Source: Trichosphaerium sp. ATCC 40318 | Taxonomy: Eukaryota; Protista; Tubulinea | Reading direction: 5' to 3' | Assembly (NCBI GenBank): GCA_038496445.1 | Contig: JALMLS010000268.1 | Location: 310,001 to 374,000, forward strand | Length of the DNA: 64,000 bases | Part shown: positions 193-56,284 of the stretch, one piece after another | Layout: each line of letters opens with the position of its first letter | How positions within the stretch are numbered: the stretch's first letter is position 1 | The notes under the pieces: model-generated | The model's input: only the letters and a program-made list of their open reading frames with translations | What the model was told of the DNA's origin: nothing | The model's database searches: none | Program-made: the position numbers and the translations under genes

Positions 193-2245
193 ATGGCCGG
201 CGTGGCACGCTACAGTGCCGTAAGAACGCGCACTAGACCAGGTTGCTTGTAATATTACGTAGTTTCAGGCATTTACGTTACTACAGGCGCTGATGCTTCT
301 GAAAATGTGCCTCGTGGATTCTGGAATAGCGAAAAACGCCAACGCTCAGCGATGAACGCCGCTGCTACAAAAATGGGTGTTAAAGTGTTGGATGACTGGC
401 ACGCCATCGATATACATTCTTTACGGCGTGCAGGTGTGCGTGGGCTATTGTCTAGCAAGTACGAACAACAATTGGCTTGCCCATAACGTGTTTCAAGGTA
501 CAAGACATCTCTTTTTGGTGCTTTGTCCCACTTGTACCCACTACATCACTGGCATGAGGAAAAATTTAGGTGTGTCTGTTTTTAAACAAATTGTTTACAA
601 CGCCTTACCCCTCAATTAGTACGAATGGCTACTGGCATAATATAAAGAACCAAAGAGAGAGGCTTGATCAAATCGCCAAAAAACTAAATCTGCGGTCTTG
701 GCAAGGCTGGTACAGCGTCACGTGCCAACAAGCCGAAAACGCGGGTGCTGATAGCATCCTAAACATGTACTGTAGCGACTTGCTTCTTCTGATACTCTAG
801 TTACAATTTATAGATACCATGCTCTGTCACGTGTACTCCCCATGGCATATCCGGAACATCCTTGGGATGTGACACAGTTTAAGTGCGTCATTGCAATCAC
901 ATCAGCATACAAACAACGATATAGGAAAAAAACACCAAGGCTGGCGTTGCACTCAAGACGCAGGAAGCTGGATTCTATGGCGCGCCAGTTGAGCGTTAAA
1001 GTGCTTAGTGACTGGTACAGAGTGACTAAAGAACAGGCGATTGACGCTGGAGGTCAGTGGTTGCTAAACAAGTGAGTGCATTGGCTTTGATATTACTGTC
1101 TTATACCTAACATCGCGTGTGCAGGTACAATCACTCGTTGATGACCACGCTGATCACAATTATACCTGAGTATGACTGGAAACCGTACCTATTCCAGTAC
1201 GATATTGTACACATTGATTAGTAGATTTACCAGCTGTTAATAGCATGAATGCTGGATATTGGCAAAGAGATAATCATGCCAGGAAGTTTATACATAAAGC
1301 AAAAAGAGAATTTGGTATAACAACATACGAGCAATGGTACCAAACGTCACGGCTTGTTGAGCTGAATTTTGAGAATAATAACTAAAGGGTTGATAGGTAT
1401 CGCGTTTCTCACAATCAGATAAAGTACACTCTAACTCCCCAAGCGTAACCGTTTTATGCTGATGCAAATGTAGAAGCTTAAATGCAGCTGGTATGCTCAG
1501 ATATTACCCTGAAATATTGGGTGTAATTTACCCTGAAATGGCGTGGGATTGGACTAAATTTTCGAGTTTTGACAAGAAGACTAAGCAACGGTAAAGCTTT
1601 CACGATTGACATATGCCCCTTTTTTGATTAAGTTCCTTAGCGTACTGCTGGATTGCATAAAAACGCTTTATCCATACAATGTGGTGCAAGAGGAGCACGC
1701 TATTGGTTTACGATACAGCACAGGCGCACCTGTTACAATCGACATATACGTGGCGGATTACAATCTCGCTATAGAATACCAGGGCATGCAGTTTTGTGAA
1801 GGAGCGTTCGGATTTGATTATTAACTTCAAAACATAGGGGAGCACCACTACCATCAAGTACTTACACATACAGCACCTCTCGGTGTATTCGAAGCACGTG
1901 ATGTAGAGAAAAAAGAGTGTTTAGAAGCCATGGGTACGCGTTCGCCTTGAACACTTTTAACAGGGATTTTGACTTATGCTTCATGCCCATAGGAATTACG
2001 CTTATATCAGTGCCTTACTGGTGGAAACCAAACGACATTGCTTCCTTGGCAGCAACGATCAAACACTATGCACCGCATGTCGATACATCCGGCTATAATA
2101 AAGGCTGTCCGGTCTTACCATCAACCATGCCTGGTCTCACTACAGGCACGATAAAAAAAACACGATATTTGTTATTTAACTGGGTTTATTAGGAGACTAC
2201 AGTATAATGTCACCAAGTGCACTTGACCTAGAATCCAGCGAGTAA
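193..2245 (+). CDS. Multi-exon repeat protein (G[FY]W...DWY.V repeats) with C-terminal RAP/PD-(D/E)xK nuclease-like domain; possibly organellar RNA-binding
   Basis: Repeats GFWNSEKRQR, GYWHNIKNQRERLDQIAKKL..WQGWYSVT, LSDWYRVT; C-terminal TIDIYVADYNLAIEYQGEHHY...RDVEKKE..GITLISVPYWW after splicing. Start codon uncertain. Confidence 0.65.
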
Positions 2246-41639: not shown

Positions 41640-44600
41640 TCACGTTTTATGTACAAAAGAAATAATAAGTTTGGTTCGTTTACTCAGCGTTGGCCTTAAA
41701 TCTACCTCTTGCGTAATATGTGTAATCAAAGTCACGTGTTTTACAAGGTAGTACACAAAACCAAAGTCAGGTTTATTCTCCTTTAGTAGCTGCAATAGCT
41801 GCTGAAACTGCCCGCAATTAAAGCATCGCAGCGTACATAACACTGGCTGAAAATGACAGCTCAGCGCTTCACAATTCTGGGTGAGCCAAAGCCCAGATAG
41901 CGAATTGTCACTGTACAGCAATCACACGAAAAACGTGTGGCGTGTCGCGATTGGTATTGGCAATGTTTTATAATACAACGTTTTACCGGATTAGTTGGTG
42001 GTTAAAACCAATACGTGTTGTCAATGCGGATCAAATACCTGAACAGAAGCAGAGTATTTGTCCAACAACGCAAAGTTGACTTGTGACGATACAGCCGTCA
42101 ATGTTATCCGGGCAAGCTTTGGGCAGTGCTCCAACAAAGGGATCAAATACGTTGTGTCACATTTTATGTTACCAGAGACATCCAATACTCTACAAAATGA
42201 AGGTTTGCGTTAGAAAGAGGGAAATAGCTCAATGAACATAGTTTAACTACGACATACCTGAGGTTGCTGGAGTTAGGCGAGGAGGCTAAAAGTTGCATTG
42301 TCTTGTTCGTTATCCCTGGTACATCGTGCATACCAAGCACTTGAAGATTTGCGTTGTACTTGAGCAATGATGCGATGTCATCGTCGTCGATGGTTACATT
42401 GGCAGACAGCTTTAATACCCGAAGCTTCTTGCAACATGTCGCTATTTTTTTTACATACAACGCTCGTCTAGACTTCCTTGGAACAACCACATTTCCTGAG
42501 AAGGCGTAAGTTGTGGCTGGTACAGCACAGATGGATCAACAAAAAAAAAAGGTGTGTACGCGTTACCTTTTGCTGTGACATCCCTTTTAGCGTGCATGTG
42601 CGACAGATTTAGATTTTCTAGCGCTGTGCATTTTTCAACAATAGAGCCTATCGTCCCGCCTACCATAATCGAAAAATGAGTGCCACAAACCACGATGTAT
42701 AGAATTGTATTGAAATTTATATCTACTAACCTTGAATGCGTGAGCAATACGACAAGTCCAGACTGGTGAGATGACGACTCAAGGTGGAGATGCAATCCAA
42801 TACTTGATCAGTCAGTTTGCATTTGGATACATTTAGCTCCTGGACTGAAGGACACCACTCTGTAATGCGCTATAAGTTAGATTGCATGATTGGTGCGAAG
42901 AAGTATGCGGGTGCAACGTACTCAGTATGAGTTTCAAAGAAGTGTCTGTCAATGGTGTTTCACTCATGTTGAGTTTAACAATGTGCTTCTTTTCTTTTAA
43001 CGCTCCAAAGACGGATTTTATAAAGTTTGGCTTCCAAGCGGGCCACCCTTCGACACTCAACGATCGCAAATCGTGACATTGAAATAAAATCTAAAGCACA
43101 GGGGTGAGCAGTTGGTACTCCATTGTCGTTGTCTTGATAAGAAAACAAAACGTACAAGCTTCAACAATGTTGTAAATTCTCGCGAAGATCGCGACAGGTT
43201 GATAGACGATAGCTTGGTGCATTTGAGGACGCCTAAATGGAATTTGATAAATTCTTTAATTTTAATTTGAAATAATCATTGGTATAGCGTACCTTGCTTG
43301 ATGGGACTCGCACTCGCATCATAGCACCTTGCTAGGTTAAGACAAGTAAGACGCGTGTTCGTATTCAACATCCTTAGAATGTTAGGGACTTTTAAACATT
43401 GCGTCAAGCGTAAGGTGCTCAAATGCCAACATAGCGGCAGTGATATCGTATCCATATCAGCCAAGAATAAATACTTGACGTCAGGGCATGATTTCGCAAT
43501 ACTTACGAGGTGATCGGCTACAAGCGAAGACGCGTTAATAGATCTTTACTAATTTTCGATTAATTGTGTACTGTTCAAAAAACTGGCAGGTGCCATTTCT
43601 AATCTCCGTAGTTTGCTGCATAACTTGATGCCATCCAAGGTATCTGACATGAAATGTCTCTGAAGGTTAAATCTAAGATCTTGTAACGTTTGGCTGTGCT
43701 TAGCGAGGACTACAGTTAATCCATTCCCCAAACTCTGCTCTATACACCAACAACAACAAGTCAATATAAACCAAGTTAATGGCAACCTAAACAAACGTAC
43801 CAGCGTTGGTTGTGGGATAGGTGACGTTATTCAGACAAATATCTCTAGAGGATCACAATTTCAGTTAAAACAAAAAATCGAACCTTTTAGCGCACCTAAT
43901 ATCTAGCGTAACCAATCCACGCAGTTTGGCAAGGTGCAGAATGCCATCTTGATTAATTTTTCTGCATTTTGCCAAATACAGGTGCGTCAACGTCGACTGA
44001 TGCGTTGTTAGCGCCAATAAACTATCGTTTGTCAATTGTTTGCACTCCTAGAGAACAAATTGTTAACGACAGCGTTCTGATCGCCAAAAAAAAAAAAACA
44101 GAAAAGTCTGCCGCCGTACAGAAACGTCCAGATGATCTAAATGGGGCGCAGAACGCGCTAAAAACGATATCGTTTTATCTGATATGCTAGTCTCCTTTGC
44201 TATGAATGTTCTAGTAGGGTTGTGAGGTCTCGCCAAGCCGTTTTTGTGAAAAAATGTACCGTAAATTCCGGACTGTTACGCGTTCTAGCAAATTGTGTCG
44301 CGCTGCTTTGCAACCACTGACATTCAAGTGTCGTATGTTGCGCATGGTCGTCAAGACCCTGAGGCAATTGGTTTGAGTTTAGTTTGCCGGTTATGCAACC
44401 CAACGCTTACCTAGCACCACACAAATACGCTGCAGACGAGAAATCAAGTCTAGGAAGCATGGAAAACGACTTGATTACCATGGTGCGCCAATCTTGGCAC
44501 ACATACGTTGCAGTCAGGAGCTGCTCGGGTGACATCTCTGCAAGCAAGGAGAATATATGCATGACGAGCTCTTCAGGTAATGTCATTGTTTGCGGCCGGA

Positions 44601-49947: not shown

Positions 49948-51227
49948 CTATAGTTCTACATTGTTTGGGACTTTTTGTGGCGCGATAGCCTGTGTTGTGG
50001 GCTTAGGTATCGTATATTCATACAACACTGTCCCTTCGCTGTTTATAAACCGCGTTTCCATGTTGGTTGGGGATAGTTGTACTTCAAGGAAGCCACCAGC
50101 GATATCTAGAAAACAAATGTAAACTCTGGTACATTTACACTTGTGAGCACCTGTGCTAAAATACTTGAGGCTACCTACGGGGACAGCGTCATCGTGTTTT
50201 CGATGATTGTGGGCATGGGCTCCACAACCTACGGAGAAAATAAAGAGGTTGCTTTGTTAGCTGCACCTTACCGCTCACAAAGTAACTCATTGACCCATCT
50301 AAAAAGTGTTGTAGGGCATGCTCGTGTCCTGCCAGGTACGCAGCTACGCCATACTGTTCTAGAAGAGGGCTAAAGCGATGCTGCAAAGCTGGTGTTGGCC
50401 CGTGGTATGCAACTGATCTGTTGGTGCGGGATGATAAGTGGGTAGGTTGGACTAGACAGACTGCTTCAAAACGTACAAAATCGGGTGATGTCCAACAACG
50501 ATCTTCCATGAAGCATTTGACATCTTCAACTCATTTTCAAGCCAATCAAGCTGTTCCTTGGCTTGCCATCCACCATGAACAATTACTAGTTTGGTGTTAC
50601 CAGAATGAGCAGCCCCAAAAAGAGAGTTGTGCCTGTTGTATCAGTGTGGAATATCTGTAATGTTTGATTGCTGTTCGGTATGTTATGCGACGTCGTGTAC
50701 CACATCGACTCAAAGTGCCAACGGTCTGACCTGTCCGAATATGCTATTTGAGCGCTTACGTTGGACATGTGGTCGTGGTTGCCGGCTATTTGGAACCATC
50801 TGATCCAAAAAGTTAGGAATTGATACCATTCTACGAAAACTGCGTCTTACGTCATTGGACTAGCGTATACATCCTCAAAAGTCTTCTTAAATTGTATGTC
50901 GTCCACAGAAGATACGCCTGACCTTAGTTCAAAGTGAGTGTCCTGTAAATAAAACGTGTAGAATTGTACAACGTGCCAATAAAAATTGTCTCCCAAACCC
51001 ACAACAAAAGACAGGTTTCTGTCGCTGTACATACTATCCAATTGGTTTGCGACATTGATCTGTAAATCTGTGGTATACGGAGAGCCATAGTGTCCTGATG
51101 AGCACTTAGCTGCTTTTGAGCTAATAAGCGTACCTCCCCAGTCTCCTATTGCTACAAATCGCAACTGACAGGTGCAAACCGATACTAATAGAGCGACTGC
51201 TAATGCCACTGTACGCACATGCATCAT
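49948..51227 (-). CDS. Secreted purple (tartrate-resistant, ACP5-like) acid phosphatase
   Basis: Signal peptide; GDWGG, GDNFY, GNHDH, GHEH metal-binding motifs. Confidence 0.9.
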
Positions 51228-51541
51228 CTTGCTATTTAAATAACAAAATGTAGATGCCACGTCACTCAAGCGTGGCTTATGTTCAAAAATGAAGAATATT
51301 GTCCGAACAGGGGAGTAGTGCCTTATTTAGTGCTACTACAAACTAGGTAGTGAATGATGCGTCGTTAAAAACTGTGATTCAGAACACTTGTGATATACGA
51401 CTGCTGTTTATTTATTGTATGTACGGAGTAGTAGCCGTATGAGCGCAGGCACAATTTGAAAAAAAATTAAAGAGGGTTGCACCTAAGACCCTTTGTTTTT
51501 GACATGTCTTGTAATGGGGGCGTTATAATTTTTGTTTGTAT

Positions 51542-54500
51542 TTATTCTTCTTCGTCTTGCCTCTGGTAATTCGCTAGATTGGTCAGAATGTCACGTATCA
51601 CGTTTTGGTAATCGGCAGGGAGTGCGCTAATGGCGCCATTTATCAAGTCCGGATGAAGTGTCTTTTTCATCTGATCGAGAACGGCGAGGATGCGGTTCTG
51701 GCCCTTTGCATCGATGAACTCTGTACCAACTACTTCACAAAAGATTTTAAACAGGTGCGGTGTGTGTTCTCCTTTTTGACCGAGGACTATTTGACCCAAT
51801 TGTTTACTAAGGATAAGTATTAATAAAGGCAAGACCAATCCAAAACAATTATAATGAAAAAAAAAAAAAAGAGAACAGTTTTGTGTGGATTTGTTGTTTT
51901 AACGCGTACTCTTCCAACATGGAACACAACTGCTTGTGAATGACAGCAGACTCAACTATATCCTTATCACATGGTAGCCAGGAAACGTACATGGTCACCA
52001 ACTACAAGCAATAGCGTTAGAAACTGAGTGAGTAATGAATACTCTTTTCATCAGTACGCACTTGAGGGATATCACCTGCGTGTTGGCGCTGGTATAGTAT
52101 CATTTTACCGACCGAAGAAATGGCGTTATCAGTTGCAGGGGCGCCTGGACCATATCGGGAACCGTCGGCATTGATCACTTGGAGCAATTTTTGTATAACA
52201 TCTATACACAAGAATAAGTCCACACAAGCCTAAGCTTCATAATCACGAACCTTTTACGAACGGTGCAAATGCTTCACCACCACGTTGTGCGCATACACCC
52301 ATACCATATACTGCTGCTTGACGTAATGCTGCGTTTTCAGCAAATATGTTTGGAATGACTTGTTGCAAGAAGGCTTGGAACAATTGTACAATCATCTAAA
52401 ATAGAAAAAAAAGCGTTAACAAGCGCGGACATAATTAAGAGGGAATGACGCGATCAACTTACCTCAGGTGAACCGCAGTGCTCTATGACATCATCAAATA
52501 TACAGACGGCAAGATGTCTGTCAGATTGGTGCTTGGATTGGAGCAGTTGTGCCACAACCTTACCGAGCTGTGGGAATAAAGGCAAAAATTGTTGTTTGTT
52601 CCAACGACAAAGAGCACCCACAATTTCAGCCAACTTGAAAAAAAAAAGACAAGTGAGTATTCAAATAAAAAAAAAAAGTAACTTAAAACAAAAAACCCAA
52701 ATACCTCAGCTTCACAAAGATTGTCTCGTTCCTCGTCTTCAAGAAGTTCACGTGCAGATAGACCTTGCTCAATCTTGGAGAGTTCAGCTATAAAAAATGT
52801 CGTTAATACAAAAGATTGGGTGACAAGTTACGAAAAGATTGTATACCAGCTCGCGCATTTCGTCTGGTGTGTACCCAGTTCAAAACTTGCTCAATAATGT
52901 TAATGTTTACTGCAATATGTTCTTGTGTGAGGCCATTGTCGCCCAAGTACATGATGCACTCATGGACACATTCAATTTCGGCTTGCAAGATATCAGGATC
53001 TTGAATTTCTGCCATTTCGTCTTGAATTGCAGATAGCTACAAGTGGAGCATGTCACGAGAATGAACGGTGTAATTAACAACGTACAAGTTCAGTGAGGAT
53101 AGCAGTCCATAGCGCTGTAATGTTGGCAGCACCTTGTCCTGTTTTTTGTACATTCAATACACATGCGCGCAACAACAGAGGTATTGTGTTTAATGAAGCG
53201 ATACGAACACGTGAGGCTGAGTTAAGGAGGCTATAATAAAATTTTGAATCAAAAGAAAAGAAGTCGAAAAGGTCTAAGGATATCTTCATGGAGGTAGAAT
53301 TTAAGTTGTGGGAGCACAATCTTCAAAATTTGTTCAACCCATTCTATGATACCTTCCTTTAACCTGTATGTGTATGCTAGAGCACTCGGTTAGATGCACC
53401 TCAACGGGATAAAATGTGTACCATAGAGCATGTTGATGGCAGATGCCTTCTCTTCCATACCGGCTGTGTGAACAGCAATCCTCTATTAACTACTATCAGT
53501 ATACGAAAAAGACGTAGTATGTCAAAGTTACCCTGTCCTCTACTTCGACTTCGTCCCATCCTTCAGCAAGGTCGGCTTCACCGCCTTCATCTAATAAAGT
53601 AATTTCCAATTGTTGATCAGCAATAGCCATTACAGGTGGAAGCACCTAAAAGCGCAAGTGAATGAGCTAGGAGCTTTCTTTCGTTGAACAAACAGAAAAT
53701 TATATATATGGCGCATACCATTCCCAAGTAAGGAACAAAGTCTTTGCCCAAGCATCTACATATTCTGACCCAAGCCTGTAATATGTAGTCACGTTGTGGG
53801 TCATCGTTTTCCATGCCCTTATCGAGATCTGCCTTTAGCATATCCATAATGACGCGCACATCATCAAAAAAGCGTTCTTTGCCTACAGAGCATCCTACCA
53901 AACTGACACATTCCAAAGCTTTACCACGCAATTTACGATATTCTTTGGAGCGTGCTTTGGCGAGAATGTTCTTCATCACTGGGATGACAGTGTCATAGTA
54001 CTAATTTAAAAAATATTAGGCAAAAAATTCCATGAACAAAATAAGATTGTGGCGCCACGTACTTTAGTGAAATTGGCTTTTGAGCAATCAGCAACGGCTG
54101 CGATTGCAGTTACAGCTTGTTCTTGAAGCCTTATATTGCCGGAGTTTAGAAGCATCAATAACTTGGACATGATGAGTTCTAGATATGGTGGTACAAATTT
54201 GGCATCAAATTTTTCCATAAAGTTAATTATGGCGGCGCCAGCGTGACATTGAACTCTACAAAATAATTAAACTTGTGTGGTAATCATATTATTATAGGTA
54301 CCTCAAGTTGGCAGTATCGTCCATTAAACTCATGAGCGCAGGTAGGGCTTGCGTGTGAAAGTTCATCTGAAATCCAGGCTATAGAAAGGGGCAAGTCAGT
54401 AAGGAAATTAATTGGTTAGGTTTTTTTTTAACGTACACCGAAATCGCTAGACATCTGTCCAACAGCGTTTGCAGCTGCCCAACGCACGAGCGGATGAGGA

Positions 54501-56284
54501 TCTGCAAAGCGAGGAAGAACAGCTGGTACAATATTTGCTAGGTTAGGTCCCATTTCAGCAACACATCCTTCACCAATCTGTGCCAAAGCGATTAATCCAG
54601 CACGTCTGTGCTTCCAGTTTCCATCCGAAAGCAATTTTGGTATTTGATCGAACATGATAGGAATAATTTGTTTGCCACCACAGGCAATAGACAAACGATC
54701 TAGATACTCTTCAGCAATGTTCCAGTTGGTATTTTCTAAATTATTTCTATCATCTTCTTGCGTGTTCCATTCAGCTACATCTTCCTCGATTTCAAGCATC
54801 ATCGAGATAAGAATACGTAATGTATTTGCAAAGTACCCTTCAATGGCGCTTGCAGTTTCGCCCTTGTCGCTTTCAGCGATTGAAATAAGGAATTCGGTAC
54901 TTGATTGACGAACATCTAAAATACCAGTGAGGTCCAATCAATCAAAAAAAAAAAAGCAAAACGACGTTATCATTTCTTTTGAAAGGGACATTAAACGCAC
55001 GATCGTCTAATTGTTTGGCGTCGGATATTTTTATCATTTCCGCAATAATTGGTTGTAAATGGAATTTCAAGAAAGCAGGTGATAGCTCAGCCAAATCTGA
55101 GAATAGCTGAATTGCTTGTTTTGCAGTGTCTTCATCGTTCATTTGTAGTGCCTTTGAAATAATCTAGAGCATTATTAGTTTTTTACGCCAAACACTGGGG
55201 AAGAAGGAAGAGTACGCACGCTCAACATGGCAGGTAAATATTTAGCCAATTCTCTAACTTGCTCAACAGAATCGCAAAACTGCGTTGCGTAGGCAAAGGC
55301 GGTAAACGCTTGCAAACCAGACCTTACATTAGCATCACCTAATCCTGAAACCCAAATAGGCGTCAACTGTGGAAACAACGGTTTTAATTTGTCGCCCATG
55401 TACGCTACGAGCTTCGAGTATATGGTCATTGCGGCCTAAAACAAATAAGAAGGAGTGACAGTTGCTGATGCCGAAATAGTTTAAAACCTAAATCAGGTGT
55501 CTACGGATGTTCAAATTTCTGGTGTAAGCGCAGTAATTCAAGCACAATCAAAATAGATTGATGACATACCTCACGATGAGCAGGATTTGGGGATCGTGAG
55601 TACTCGACTAGAAACGGAAAAAGTTGATTCCACTCGCCTAAAATAGTTAGCAGAGGTACAACTAGGTGATAAGCTTCACGGCTTTTTTGATTGAGCATAA
55701 AAAAAAAAAATTGATTAATAACCAAATCGGCTTGGAGCCTCGTTTACGCATGGAATTAATTAAAACATCCACGAAAGGCGTTACAGATAACCATTTTAAC
55801 GAACTCTATTTGTACGCACCGTTTTTACTAATAGCCACCATAACCATAGCCACACATTCTGTTGCTTGTCGTAGAACGTTGGGGTTAGCCTCATTCTTGA
55901 GAACTAGCACTATTTTAGTGTTTTGAACTTTACACGTTTACTAACCCTCTAACAAGGTGCCCTGTGTAAATGCACGCGCTTCTGCGTCCAATTGCTCCCA
56001 CATTCCCTCTTTCACAATTGCACCGCGCAGCAAAATGGCGCCAAGCGATCGTATCTAACACTGTAGTCATAACCAATGGCGCTTATTTAAAAATGCGAAA
56101 AAACAAAGTACAATAAACAAACCTTCAGGTCAGCGCTTCGCTTTGTAGCTTCTAACAATAACATGACAATTGCTTTGGGATTAGACTGTCGAAGCTTCTC
56201 GAACATGCTTTGGGCATTATTACGCGCAGCATTGTCTGCGCTGGTTATATTCGCCAATAGCTGTTCGAATTGTTGAAACTCCAT
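51542..56284 (-). CDS. IPO5: Importin-5 / karyopherin beta-3
   Basis: HEAT repeats; LRGKALECVSLVG..VGKERF, WVRICRCLGKDFVPYL, FYLHEGVRIA, ATDNAISSVGK. Confidence 0.93.
53211..53283 (-). other. U12-type AT-AC intron in IPO5
   Basis: ATATCCTT donor, TCCTTAAC branch 10 nt from the 3' end, AC acceptor; removal restores KFYLHEGVRIAS. Confidence 0.92.

What the first reader, a model, noticed from the sequence alone, without database searches (positions are those of the whole stretch)
53211..53283. AT-AC minor-spliceosome intron in importin-5
Seen: 73-nt segment with ATATCCTT donor, TCCTTAAC branch site and AC acceptor; removing it restores FYLHEGVRIA. Known: these are the U11/U12 consensus signals, and the minor spliceosome is patchily retained in protists. 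Inference: this organism has a working U12 spliceosome, and GT-AG-only annotation would mis-model the gene.
Basis: partly seen in the sequence, partly recalled or inferred. Interest (0 to 1): 0.75.

Follow-up and report, generated by a model that had tools for sequence, protein, structure and literature searches.

The report
Ancient AT-AC minor intron in importin-5
A 73-base interruption in an amoeba's importin-5 gene is a genuine "minor spliceosome" (U12-type, AT-AC) intron. It sits at exactly the same codon as the known minor intron of human IPO5, so the find is correct and neat but belongs to an already well-known kind.

Summary
On the minus strand, window 53283-53211 is a 73-nt segment that starts with ATATCCTT, carries TCCTTAAC with its branch A 11 nt from the end, and ends in AC.

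- **Reading frame.** Removing the segment joins ...LKFYLHE to (G)VRIASLNTIPLLL. Importin-5 orthologues read ...LKFYFHD-G-VRxAA..P.LL there without a gap. The exons on either side abut at residues 705 and 707 of one orthologue, with the split Gly codon between them.
- **Alternatives.** Every GT/GC-AG pair that keeps the frame across the segment deletes this conserved helix.
- **Machinery in the 70-Mb genome.** It encodes U11 and U6atac above the Rfam cut-offs, and a single U12 gene with the branch-site box. It also encodes the minor-spliceosome proteins PDCD7/59K, SNRNP25 and CENATAC. U4atac was not found.
- **Other introns of this class.** Strict U12-type patterns give 13 AT-AC and about 8 GT-AG sites genome-wide, against 1 and 0 in reversed-pattern controls.
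- **Match to human.** A published table prints the junction of human IPO5 minor intron 21 as FHD-G|VR, phase 1. That is the same codon and phase, so this is probably an ancient orthologous minor intron.

The organism is probably the amoebozoan Trichosphaerium sp. U12 splicing is already known in Amoebozoa, and this scan has already reported U12 introns in this same genome. RNA evidence for this junction could not be obtained. Verdict: real, correctly interpreted, of modest novelty.

The parts
53211..53283 (-). 73-nt U12-type AT-AC intron, phase 1, in the importin-5-like gene
   Evidence: Read directly from the sequence. It is the only donor plus branch-box pair in the window. The junction is validated against orthologues.
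53276..53283 (-). 5' splice site ATATCCTT (U11/U6atac recognition box)
53221..53228 (-). Branch-point box TCCTTAAC. The branch A is 11 nt upstream of the 3' splice site AC (53212-53211).
   Evidence: It is complementary to the GUAAGGAAAAU box of the genome's U12 snRNA.
53284..53376 (-). Upstream exon (93 nt) encoding (A)YTYRLKEGIIEWVEQILKIVLPQLKFYLHE plus the first base of the Gly codon
   Evidence: PDB human importin-5 residues 691-716, E=2.7e-5.
53086..53210 (-). Downstream exon (125 nt) encoding (G)VRIASLNTIPLLLRACVLNVQKTGQGAANITALWTAILTEL
   Evidence: Its V1 aligns to residue 707 of orthologue P0037, while the upstream exon ends at residue 705.
53377..53421 (-). Neighbouring ordinary intron, 45 nt, GTACAC...CTCTAG (GT-AG)
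   Evidence: It is the only acceptor that keeps the frame and gives MLYAYTYRLKEG, matching the orthologue consensus ML.CYA.ELKEG.
53037..53085 (-). Neighbouring ordinary intron, 49 nt, GTACGT...TTGTAG (GT-AG)
51542..56284 (-). Whole importin-5 / Kap121-type gene, with many short exons. The ATG is at 56284 and the stop at 51542-51544.
   Evidence: ORF pieces. Pfam on exons. tblastn of the 1090-aa orthologue P0010 tiles residues 7-1088 in order on the minus strand.

Best explanation
Window 53283-53211 (minus strand) is a U12-type AT-AC intron of an intact importin-5 (IPO5/Kap121-type) gene. Removing it joins ...KFYLHE to G-VRIAS....

The mechanism below is inferred from how the family is known to work. 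The U11/U12 di-snRNP binds the ATATCCTT donor through the U11 5' end (UAAAAGGG). It binds the TCCTTAAC branch box through the U12 GUAAGGAAAAU box. U4atac/U6atac.U5 then joins, U6atac replaces U11, and the branch A 11 nt from the 3' end attacks the donor.

The intron lies in the same Gly codon and the same phase as human IPO5 intron 21, itself a U12-type AT-AC intron. It is therefore most likely an orthologous intron inherited from the common ancestor of Amoebozoa and animals. The signals, the frame restoration, the snRNA and protein genes and the positional identity are shown here. The actual splicing in RNA is inferred.
For: - **Signals.** Exact consensus signals and spacing.
- **Junction.** It restores an ungapped, highly conserved motif seen in about 38 of the 150 retrieved orthologues that carry the motif. 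The upstream exon ends at residue 705 and the downstream exon begins at residue 707 of P0037, with the split Gly as residue 706. tblastn of P0010 gives residues 641-703 then 703-747 across the gap.
- **Gene identity.** The upstream exon aligns to human importin-5 PDB chains at 691-716, ending ...KFYFHD.
- **Alternatives.** In-frame GT/GC-AG pairs all delete that helix.
- **Minor snRNAs.** U11 scores 66.4 bits (cut-off 39), U6atac 51.9 bits (cut-off 33), and U12 39.2 bits over its full length with the branch-site box.
- **Minor-spliceosome proteins.** PDCD7/59K scores 42.5 bits, SNRNP25's Ubiquitin_4 domain 31.9 bits, and CENATAC/CCDC84 60.9 and 29.3 bits.
- **A class of such introns.** 13 strict AT-AC and about 8 strict GT-AG U12-type sites of 54-81 nt, against 1 and 0 in controls.
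- **Human junction.** The IPO5 AT-AC intron is printed as TTCCACGATG|ATATCCTAC...TTCCTTAACAATGAAAC|GTGTTC in the supplement of PMC8280824. That reads F-H-D-G|V, phase 1, as here.
Against: - No RNA evidence for this junction was obtained.
- U4atac was not detected by the Rfam model or by my pattern hunts.
- U12 scores below the Rfam gathering threshold, because its gene is interrupted.
- U6atac carries GCCGA instead of AAGGA in the box thought to pair with the donor. This is the known 'CC variant' of Acanthamoeba, Physarum and others (PMC2396436).
- In 80 metagenomic or metatranscriptomic IPO5-like loci the motif is uninterrupted, so they add no further support for conservation.
Confidence: 0.93

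Rival explanations
1. It is an AT-AC intron, but the major (U2-type) spliceosome removes it, as happens for a few human AT-AC introns.
For: Major-type AT-AC introns exist, for example SYCP2 and TAF2, which served as controls in PMC8280824. U4atac was not found in this genome.
Against: Both the donor ATATCCTT and the branch box TCCTTAAC, placed 11 nt from the 3' end, are perfect U12-type signals. Major-type AT-AC introns lack them. The genome keeps U11, U12, U6atac and three minor-specific proteins. The human intron at the same position is experimentally U12-dependent.
Confidence: 0.03
2. It is not an intron at all. It would be a 73-nt insertion, an assembly error or a frameshift in a decaying gene copy, and its resemblance to U12 signals would be chance.
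For: No transcript evidence was obtained here.
Against: The chance of both 8-mers at the right spacing, with exact frame restoration at a conserved motif, is negligible. It is the only such pair in 128 kb of sequence counting both strands, and the genome-wide control gives 1 against 13. The rest of the gene is intact and tiles a 1090-aa orthologue. The position is identical to a known human minor intron.
Confidence: 0.02
3. The gene is spliced here through a conventional GT-AG pair, for example 53352..53274 or 53352..53217. That would give a shorter or altered protein, and the AT-AC signals would go unused.
For: Several GT/GC-AG pairs keep the reading frame open.
Against: All of them delete the conserved IIEWVEQILKIVLPQLKFYLHE helix or replace it with unrelated residues. 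Every orthologue keeps that helix. Their donors (GTATCA, GCTCCC) are poor.
Confidence: 0.02

Closest known systems
Human IPO5 intron 21 (U12-type, AT-AC; CENATAC-dependent A-type minor intron, PMC8280824)
   Same: It lies in the same gene family, the same Gly codon of the KFYFHD-G-VR motif and the same phase 1. It has the same AT-AC ends, and the first six exon bases after the intron are the same (GTGTTC).
   Different: The human intron is about 1.7 kb with donor ATATCCTA, and 8 nt follow its TCCTTAAC box. This one is 73 nt with a perfect ATATCCTT, and 10 nt follow the box.
U12-type introns of other Amoebozoa (Acanthamoeba castellanii, Physarum polycephalum, Protostelium aurantium, Pelomyxa schiedti; PMC10639083, PMC2396436, bioRxiv 10.1101/2020.10.12.336362)
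   Same: The donor and branch signals are canonical. U11, U12 and U6atac are present, and U6atac carries the '[GU]CCGA' CC variant. U4atac is hard to find or not reported.
   Different: The branch box here is the classic TCCTTAAC, not Physarum's transformed TTTGA. I found no paper reporting minor introns for Trichosphaerium or any tubulinid. Acanthamoeba's predicted minor introns were mostly not conserved with human ones, whereas this one is.
AT-AC U12 intron in HACL1 and the Ca2+-ATPase U12 introns of the same genome
   Same: Same genome and the same class of short intron. The HACL1 intron is also 73 nt. An earlier agent reported that it is removed in RNA.
   Different: They are in different genes. 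I did not re-test those loci.

Membership tests
U12-type (minor-spliceosome) intron | Extended 5' splice site /[AG]TATCCTT | tested here: met
   ATATCCTT at 53283-53276, minus strand
U12-type (minor-spliceosome) intron | Branch-point box TCCTTAAC about 10-15 nt from the 3' splice site, with no long polypyrimidine tract between them | tested here: met
   The box is at intron positions 56-63 of 73. The branch A is 11 nt from the end, followed by TCAGCCTCAC.
U12-type (minor-spliceosome) intron | AT-AC (or GT-AG) termini that give an in-frame, homology-supported junction | tested here: met
   The AT...AC junction gives KFYLHE-G-VRIA. The exons abut at residues 705 and 707 of P0037, and the motif is ungapped in orthologues.
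U12-type (minor-spliceosome) intron | The genome encodes the minor snRNAs U11, U12, U4atac and U6atac | tested here: inconclusive
   U11 and U6atac are above the Rfam cut-offs. U12 matches over its full length but below the cut-off, with an intact branch-site box. U4atac was not found. The search scores only its best pre-filtered candidates, and the 2008 snRNA screen likewise lists only U11, U12 and U6atac for Acanthamoeba and Physarum.
U12-type (minor-spliceosome) intron | The genome encodes minor-spliceosome-specific proteins | tested here: met
   PDCD7/U11-59K PF16021 at 42.5 bits. SNRNP25 Ubiquitin_4 PF18036 at 31.9 bits. CENATAC/CCDC84 PF14968 at 60.9 and 29.3 bits.
U12-type (minor-spliceosome) intron | Removal from RNA depends on U12 and U6atac | not testable with these tools
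Importin-5 / Kap121 (importin beta-3) family | HEAT-repeat karyopherin of about 1100 aa with the importin-specific repeat domains | tested here: met
   Exon-by-exon Pfam gives Importin_rep_4 (1.7e-12), HEAT and HEAT_EZ, and Importin_rep_6 (4.6e-6). There is a PDB importin-5 hit. Orthologues of 1076-1099 aa tile the locus. The joined protein was not assembled or searched.
Orthologue of human IPO5 minor intron 21 | Same codon and phase in aligned orthologous proteins, and the same intron class | tested here: met
   The human junction is FHD-G|V, phase 1, AT-AC, from the published table. The window reads LHE-G|V, phase 1, AT-AC. Only the human comparison was possible. No genomic IPO5 locus from another U12-bearing lineage could be fetched.

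The most novel reading that the evidence does not exclude
The intron is the direct orthologue of human IPO5 intron 21. It would have been kept as an AT-AC minor intron since the common ancestor of Amoebozoa and animals. It sits in a tubulinid-type amoeba lineage for which I found no report of minor splicing. In this organism its removal would depend on a single-copy U12 snRNA gene that must itself first be spliced by the major spliceosome. That would be a built-in hierarchy between the two spliceosomes acting on a nuclear-import gene.
Probability: 0.45. Interest if true: 0.5.

Novelty: new member of a known kind. Interest (0 to 1): 0.3.

Why it matters
- **Annotation.** Annotating this genome needs AT-AC-aware gene models. 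Pipelines that allow only GT-AG would replace a conserved importin helix with unrelated sequence.
- **Taxonomic spread.** It adds a further amoebozoan lineage, probably Trichosphaerium, to the patchy map of organisms that keep the minor spliceosome.
- **Antiquity.** It gives a clean example of a minor intron held at one exact codon in both human and an amoeba. That supports the view that minor introns are ancient and slow to turn over.

None of this overturns current understanding.

Tried and rejected
- **Word search for spliced fragments.** I searched with the 82-aa ORF that contains the downstream exon, hoping for transcript-derived fragments across the junction. It was blank.
- **Large representative search with the 169-aa exon.** It returned no protein from this species (best 47-50% identity), so the junction could not be read from an own transcript. 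It did supply the orthologues used for alignment.
- **Metagenome scan.** All 80 IPO5-like loci have the motif uninterrupted. Most are intron-less transcript contigs, and the long genomic ones lack an intron there. They say nothing on wider conservation.
- **PDB search with the 41-aa downstream exon alone.** No importin hit. A pairwise comparison with orthologue P0037 resolved this.
- **U4atac.** Neither the Rfam model at E<=10 nor four pattern hunts gave a convincing gene. The hunts combined complementarity to U6atac, an Sm site and the snRNA promoter box. One locus, G000:C203 around 42970-43000, has 10+5 nt of complementarity to U6atac. It lacks a K-turn and a good Sm site, so I rejected it as unproven.
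- **The U6atac box.** I first took GCCGA, in place of AAGGA, for an anomaly. It is the published 'CC variant' of Acanthamoeba, Physarum and oomycetes, so I dropped it.
- **Alternative acceptor at 53364 for the upstream intron.** Rejected because it runs straight into a stop codon.
- **Joined protein.** Exons were searched one at a time by reference.
- **Human sequence.** The only human sequence used was two short strings printed in a paper's supplement. I read them by eye and did not save them or search with them.

Full report
**What is in the sequence**

The feature lies on the minus strand. Read 5'->3', the text is ...AAA TTC TAC CTC CAT GAA G | ATATCCTTAGACC...TATAGCCTCCTTAACTCAGCCTCAC | GT GTT CGT ATC GCT....

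- The bracketed segment is window 53283-53211 and is 73 nt long.
- It starts with ATATCCTT.
- It holds TCCTTAAC at intron positions 56-63 (window 53228-53221).
- Ten nt follow that box, so the second A of the box is 11 nt from the last intron base. The segment ends in AC.
- Removing it gives F-Y-L-H-E-G-V-R-I-A, with the Gly codon split after its first base (phase 1).

A regular-expression scan of both strands found 13 [AG]TATCCTT octamers in the window. Only this one is followed by a branch box placed just upstream of a matching intron end.

**The host gene**

ORF pieces on the minus strand run from an ATG at 56284 to a stop at 51542-51544. I searched exons one at a time, by reference.

- Pfam gives Importin_rep_4 (E=1.7e-12), HEAT, HEAT_EZ and Importin_rep_6.
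- The exon just upstream of the intron aligns to human importin-5 structures 6xte, 6xu2 and 9im6. In 6xte it matches residues 691-716, [26 protein letters not shown], with E=2.7e-5.
- A search of 1.84 billion representative proteins with the 169-aa exon returned 1520 relatives. The best full-length ones, 1076-1099 aa, include Amoeba proteus, Clastostelium and Sappinia transcriptome proteins.
- tblastn of the 1090-aa orthologue P0010 tiles its residues 7-1088 in order along the minus strand.

The gene therefore looks intact.

**Is the AT-AC junction the right one?**

- Of the 150 retrieved proteins, 40 matched my motif pattern. About 38 of those are the true site and read ...LKFYFH[DE]|[GED]VRxAA..P.LL without any gap. 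The other two were unrelated matches elsewhere in the protein.
- Pairwise BLASTP against orthologue P0037 places the upstream exon's last residue at 705 and the downstream exon's first full codon at 707. Residue 706, a Gly, is the split codon.
- P0010 aligns residues 641-703 and then 703-747 on either side of the gap.
- I listed every GT/GC...AG pair that keeps both exon frames. The ones that span the segment are 53352-53274, 53352-53217, 53352-53139 and 53315-53231. Each removes the conserved IIEWVEQILKIVLPQLKFYLHE helix or replaces it with unrelated residues, and each has a weak donor.

The flanking introns are ordinary: 53421-53377 (45 nt, GTACAC...TAG) and 53085-53037 (49 nt, GTACGT...TAG).

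**Does the organism have the machinery?**

The window is G000:C27:310001-374000 of a 70.28-Mb assembly in 642 contigs.

- **U11.** The Rfam model finds it at C151:66788-66902, 66.4 bits against a cut-off of 39. Its 5' end is UAAAAGGG.
- **U6atac.** At C20:307774-307894, 51.9 bits against a cut-off of 33.
- **U12.** At C49:145161-145303, 39.2 bits, below the cut-off of 53. The match is full-length and includes UGAGUAAGGAAAAUAA, the box that pairs with TCCTTAAC.
- **Copy number.** Exact-pattern searches show one U6atac locus and one U12 locus.
- **U4atac.** Not found by the model even at E<=10, nor by pattern hunts. The genome search scores only its top pre-filtered candidates. The 2008 snRNA screen reported only U11, U12 and U6atac for Acanthamoeba and Physarum (PMC2396436). 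I read this as 'not detected', not as 'absent'.
- **Proteins specific to the minor spliceosome.** PDCD7/U11-59K is at C58 with 42.5 bits against a cut-off of 27. The Ubiquitin_4 domain of SNRNP25 is at C73 with 31.9 bits against 22.8. CENATAC/CCDC84 is at C45:76294-77724, with three exon-level matches of 60.9, 29.3 and 19.7 bits. CENATAC is the factor that promotes A-type (AT-AN) minor introns in human cells (PMC8280824).
- **The U6atac box.** It reads GCCGA where human has AAGGA. That looked odd, but it is the published 'CC variant' of Acanthamoeba, Physarum, oomycetes and cnidarians (PMC2396436). It fits an amoebozoan origin.

**A class, not a one-off**

- ATATCCTT-N25-55-TCCTTAAC-N6-14-AC matches 13 distinct sites of 54-81 nt in the genome, against 1 for the reversed control.
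- The GT...AG version matches about 8 distinct sites, against 0.
- These strict patterns give only a lower bound on the number of minor introns.

**Position compared with human**

The CENATAC study uses 'IPO5 minor intron 21 (U12-type, AT-AC)' as its standard assay. Its supplementary tables print the junction as TTCCACGATG|ATATCCTACAACTTC ... TTCCTTAACAATGAAAC|GTGTTC.

- That reads F-H-D-G|V, with the Gly codon split after its first base.
- It matches the end of the PDB alignment...KFYFHD at residue 716.
- The amoeba reads CTCCATGAAG|ATATCCTT ... CTCAC|GTGTTCG. This is the same codon, phase and intron class, and even the same six exon bases after the intron.

I read these two short printed strings by eye. 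I did not fetch, save or search with any human contig. The simplest reading is an orthologous minor intron inherited from the common ancestor of Amoebozoa and animals.

The 80 metagenomic IPO5-like loci are transcripts or lack an intron at this site.

**Organism**

- Earlier notes of this scan name the marine amoeba Trichosphaerium.
- The published draft genome has 70.87 Mb, 710 scaffolds, a mean intron of 75 nt and a mean exon of 154 nt (PMC10521059). These fit the assembly size and the gene structure seen here.
- The nearest importin-5 relatives include amoebozoan transcriptomes.

I did not prove the identity independently. No paper in the searchable library links Trichosphaerium with minor introns. 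The pan-eukaryotic survey lists Physarum, Acanthamoeba, Pelomyxa and Protostelium for Amoebozoa.

**What is missing**

There is no RNA evidence for this junction. The word search with the exon-containing ORF was blank, and no protein from this species was in the large library. An earlier agent reported RNA-level removal of another 73-nt AT-AC intron, in HACL1, in this genome (s1-383708). I did not re-test that.

**Seen on the way**

The U12 gene is itself interrupted. The text AGCCTTAAACTAA is followed by a 51-nt GTACGT...TTGCTAG segment and then TGAGTAAGGAAAATAA.

- Removing the segment reproduces the Rfam U12 consensus exactly and restores stem-loop I.
- The snRNA promoter box AACCACAA lies at -56/-57 of three of the four U2 genes examined, and at -62 to -64 of the four U6 genes, of U6atac and of U11.
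- For U12 the box lies at -59 of the upstream mini-exon, not of the model hit.
- U2 (30 or more copies) and U6 (16 or more copies) are uninterrupted.

This scan had already reported the U12 gene intron, with RNA support (s1-378501, s1-378526). I only confirm it from the DNA and the promoter spacing. Introns in snRNA genes are known for U6, U2, U5 and U1 of some fungi (PMC5855946). I found no published case for U12.

**Verdict**

The finding is real and correctly interpreted. It is a new member of a well-known kind. The one attractive extra is exact positional identity with the human IPO5 minor intron.

Noticed in passing
L001 (G000:C49:143661-146803), minus strand, about 1700-1501; the intron is about 1687-1637: The single U12 snRNA gene is split. 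A mini-exon AGCCUUAAACUAA is followed by a 51-nt GTACGT...TTGCTAG segment and then UGAGUAAGGAAAAUAA.... Removing the segment restores the Rfam U12 consensus. The snRNA promoter box AACCACAA sits at -59 of the mini-exon. This scan had already reported it (s1-378501, s1-378526).
   Followed up: partly
L002 (G000:C20:306274-309394) 1501-1621, plus strand: U6atac carries GCCGA where human has AAGGA, the box thought to pair with the 5' splice site. This is the published 'CC variant' of Acanthamoeba, Physarum and oomycetes (PMC2396436). It still pairs poorly with the ATATCCTT donors used here.
   Followed up: yes
Upstream of the snRNA genes: L001, L002, L003, L126-L132: The snRNA genes share a promoter element AACCACAA. 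It lies at about -57 for U2 (3 of 4 genes) and -59 for U12, which would be pol II genes. It lies at -62 to -64 for U6 and U6atac, which also have a TATA-like box (pol III), and for U11.
   Followed up: partly
L124 (G000:C203:41407-44534) about 1560-1720: This locus lies downstream of an AACCACAA box. It has 10+5 nt of complementarity to the U6atac stem-II strand, but it folds back on itself and lacks a clear K-turn and Sm site. It is only a weak U4atac candidate. A C/D-box snoRNA-like match (SNORD24 model, 27 bits) lies on the opposite strand at 1685-1771.
   Followed up: partly
G000:C45:76294-77724, plus strand (L133, L134): A homologue of CENATAC/CCDC84, the human factor specific for A-type (AT-AN) minor introns, is encoded in this amoeba genome. 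There are three exon-level Pfam matches.
   Followed up: no
G000:C66:227840-227893 and 239313-239366: Two nearly identical 54-nt AT-AC U12-type introns lie 11.5 kb apart. They are presumably in recently duplicated genes. At 54 nt they are very short for minor introns.
   Followed up: no
window 50189-51269, minus strand: The neighbouring gene looks like a purple-acid-phosphatase or calcineurin-like metallophosphoesterase (motifs GDWGG...GDNFY...GHEH). I saw this only in the ORF translations.
   Followed up: no
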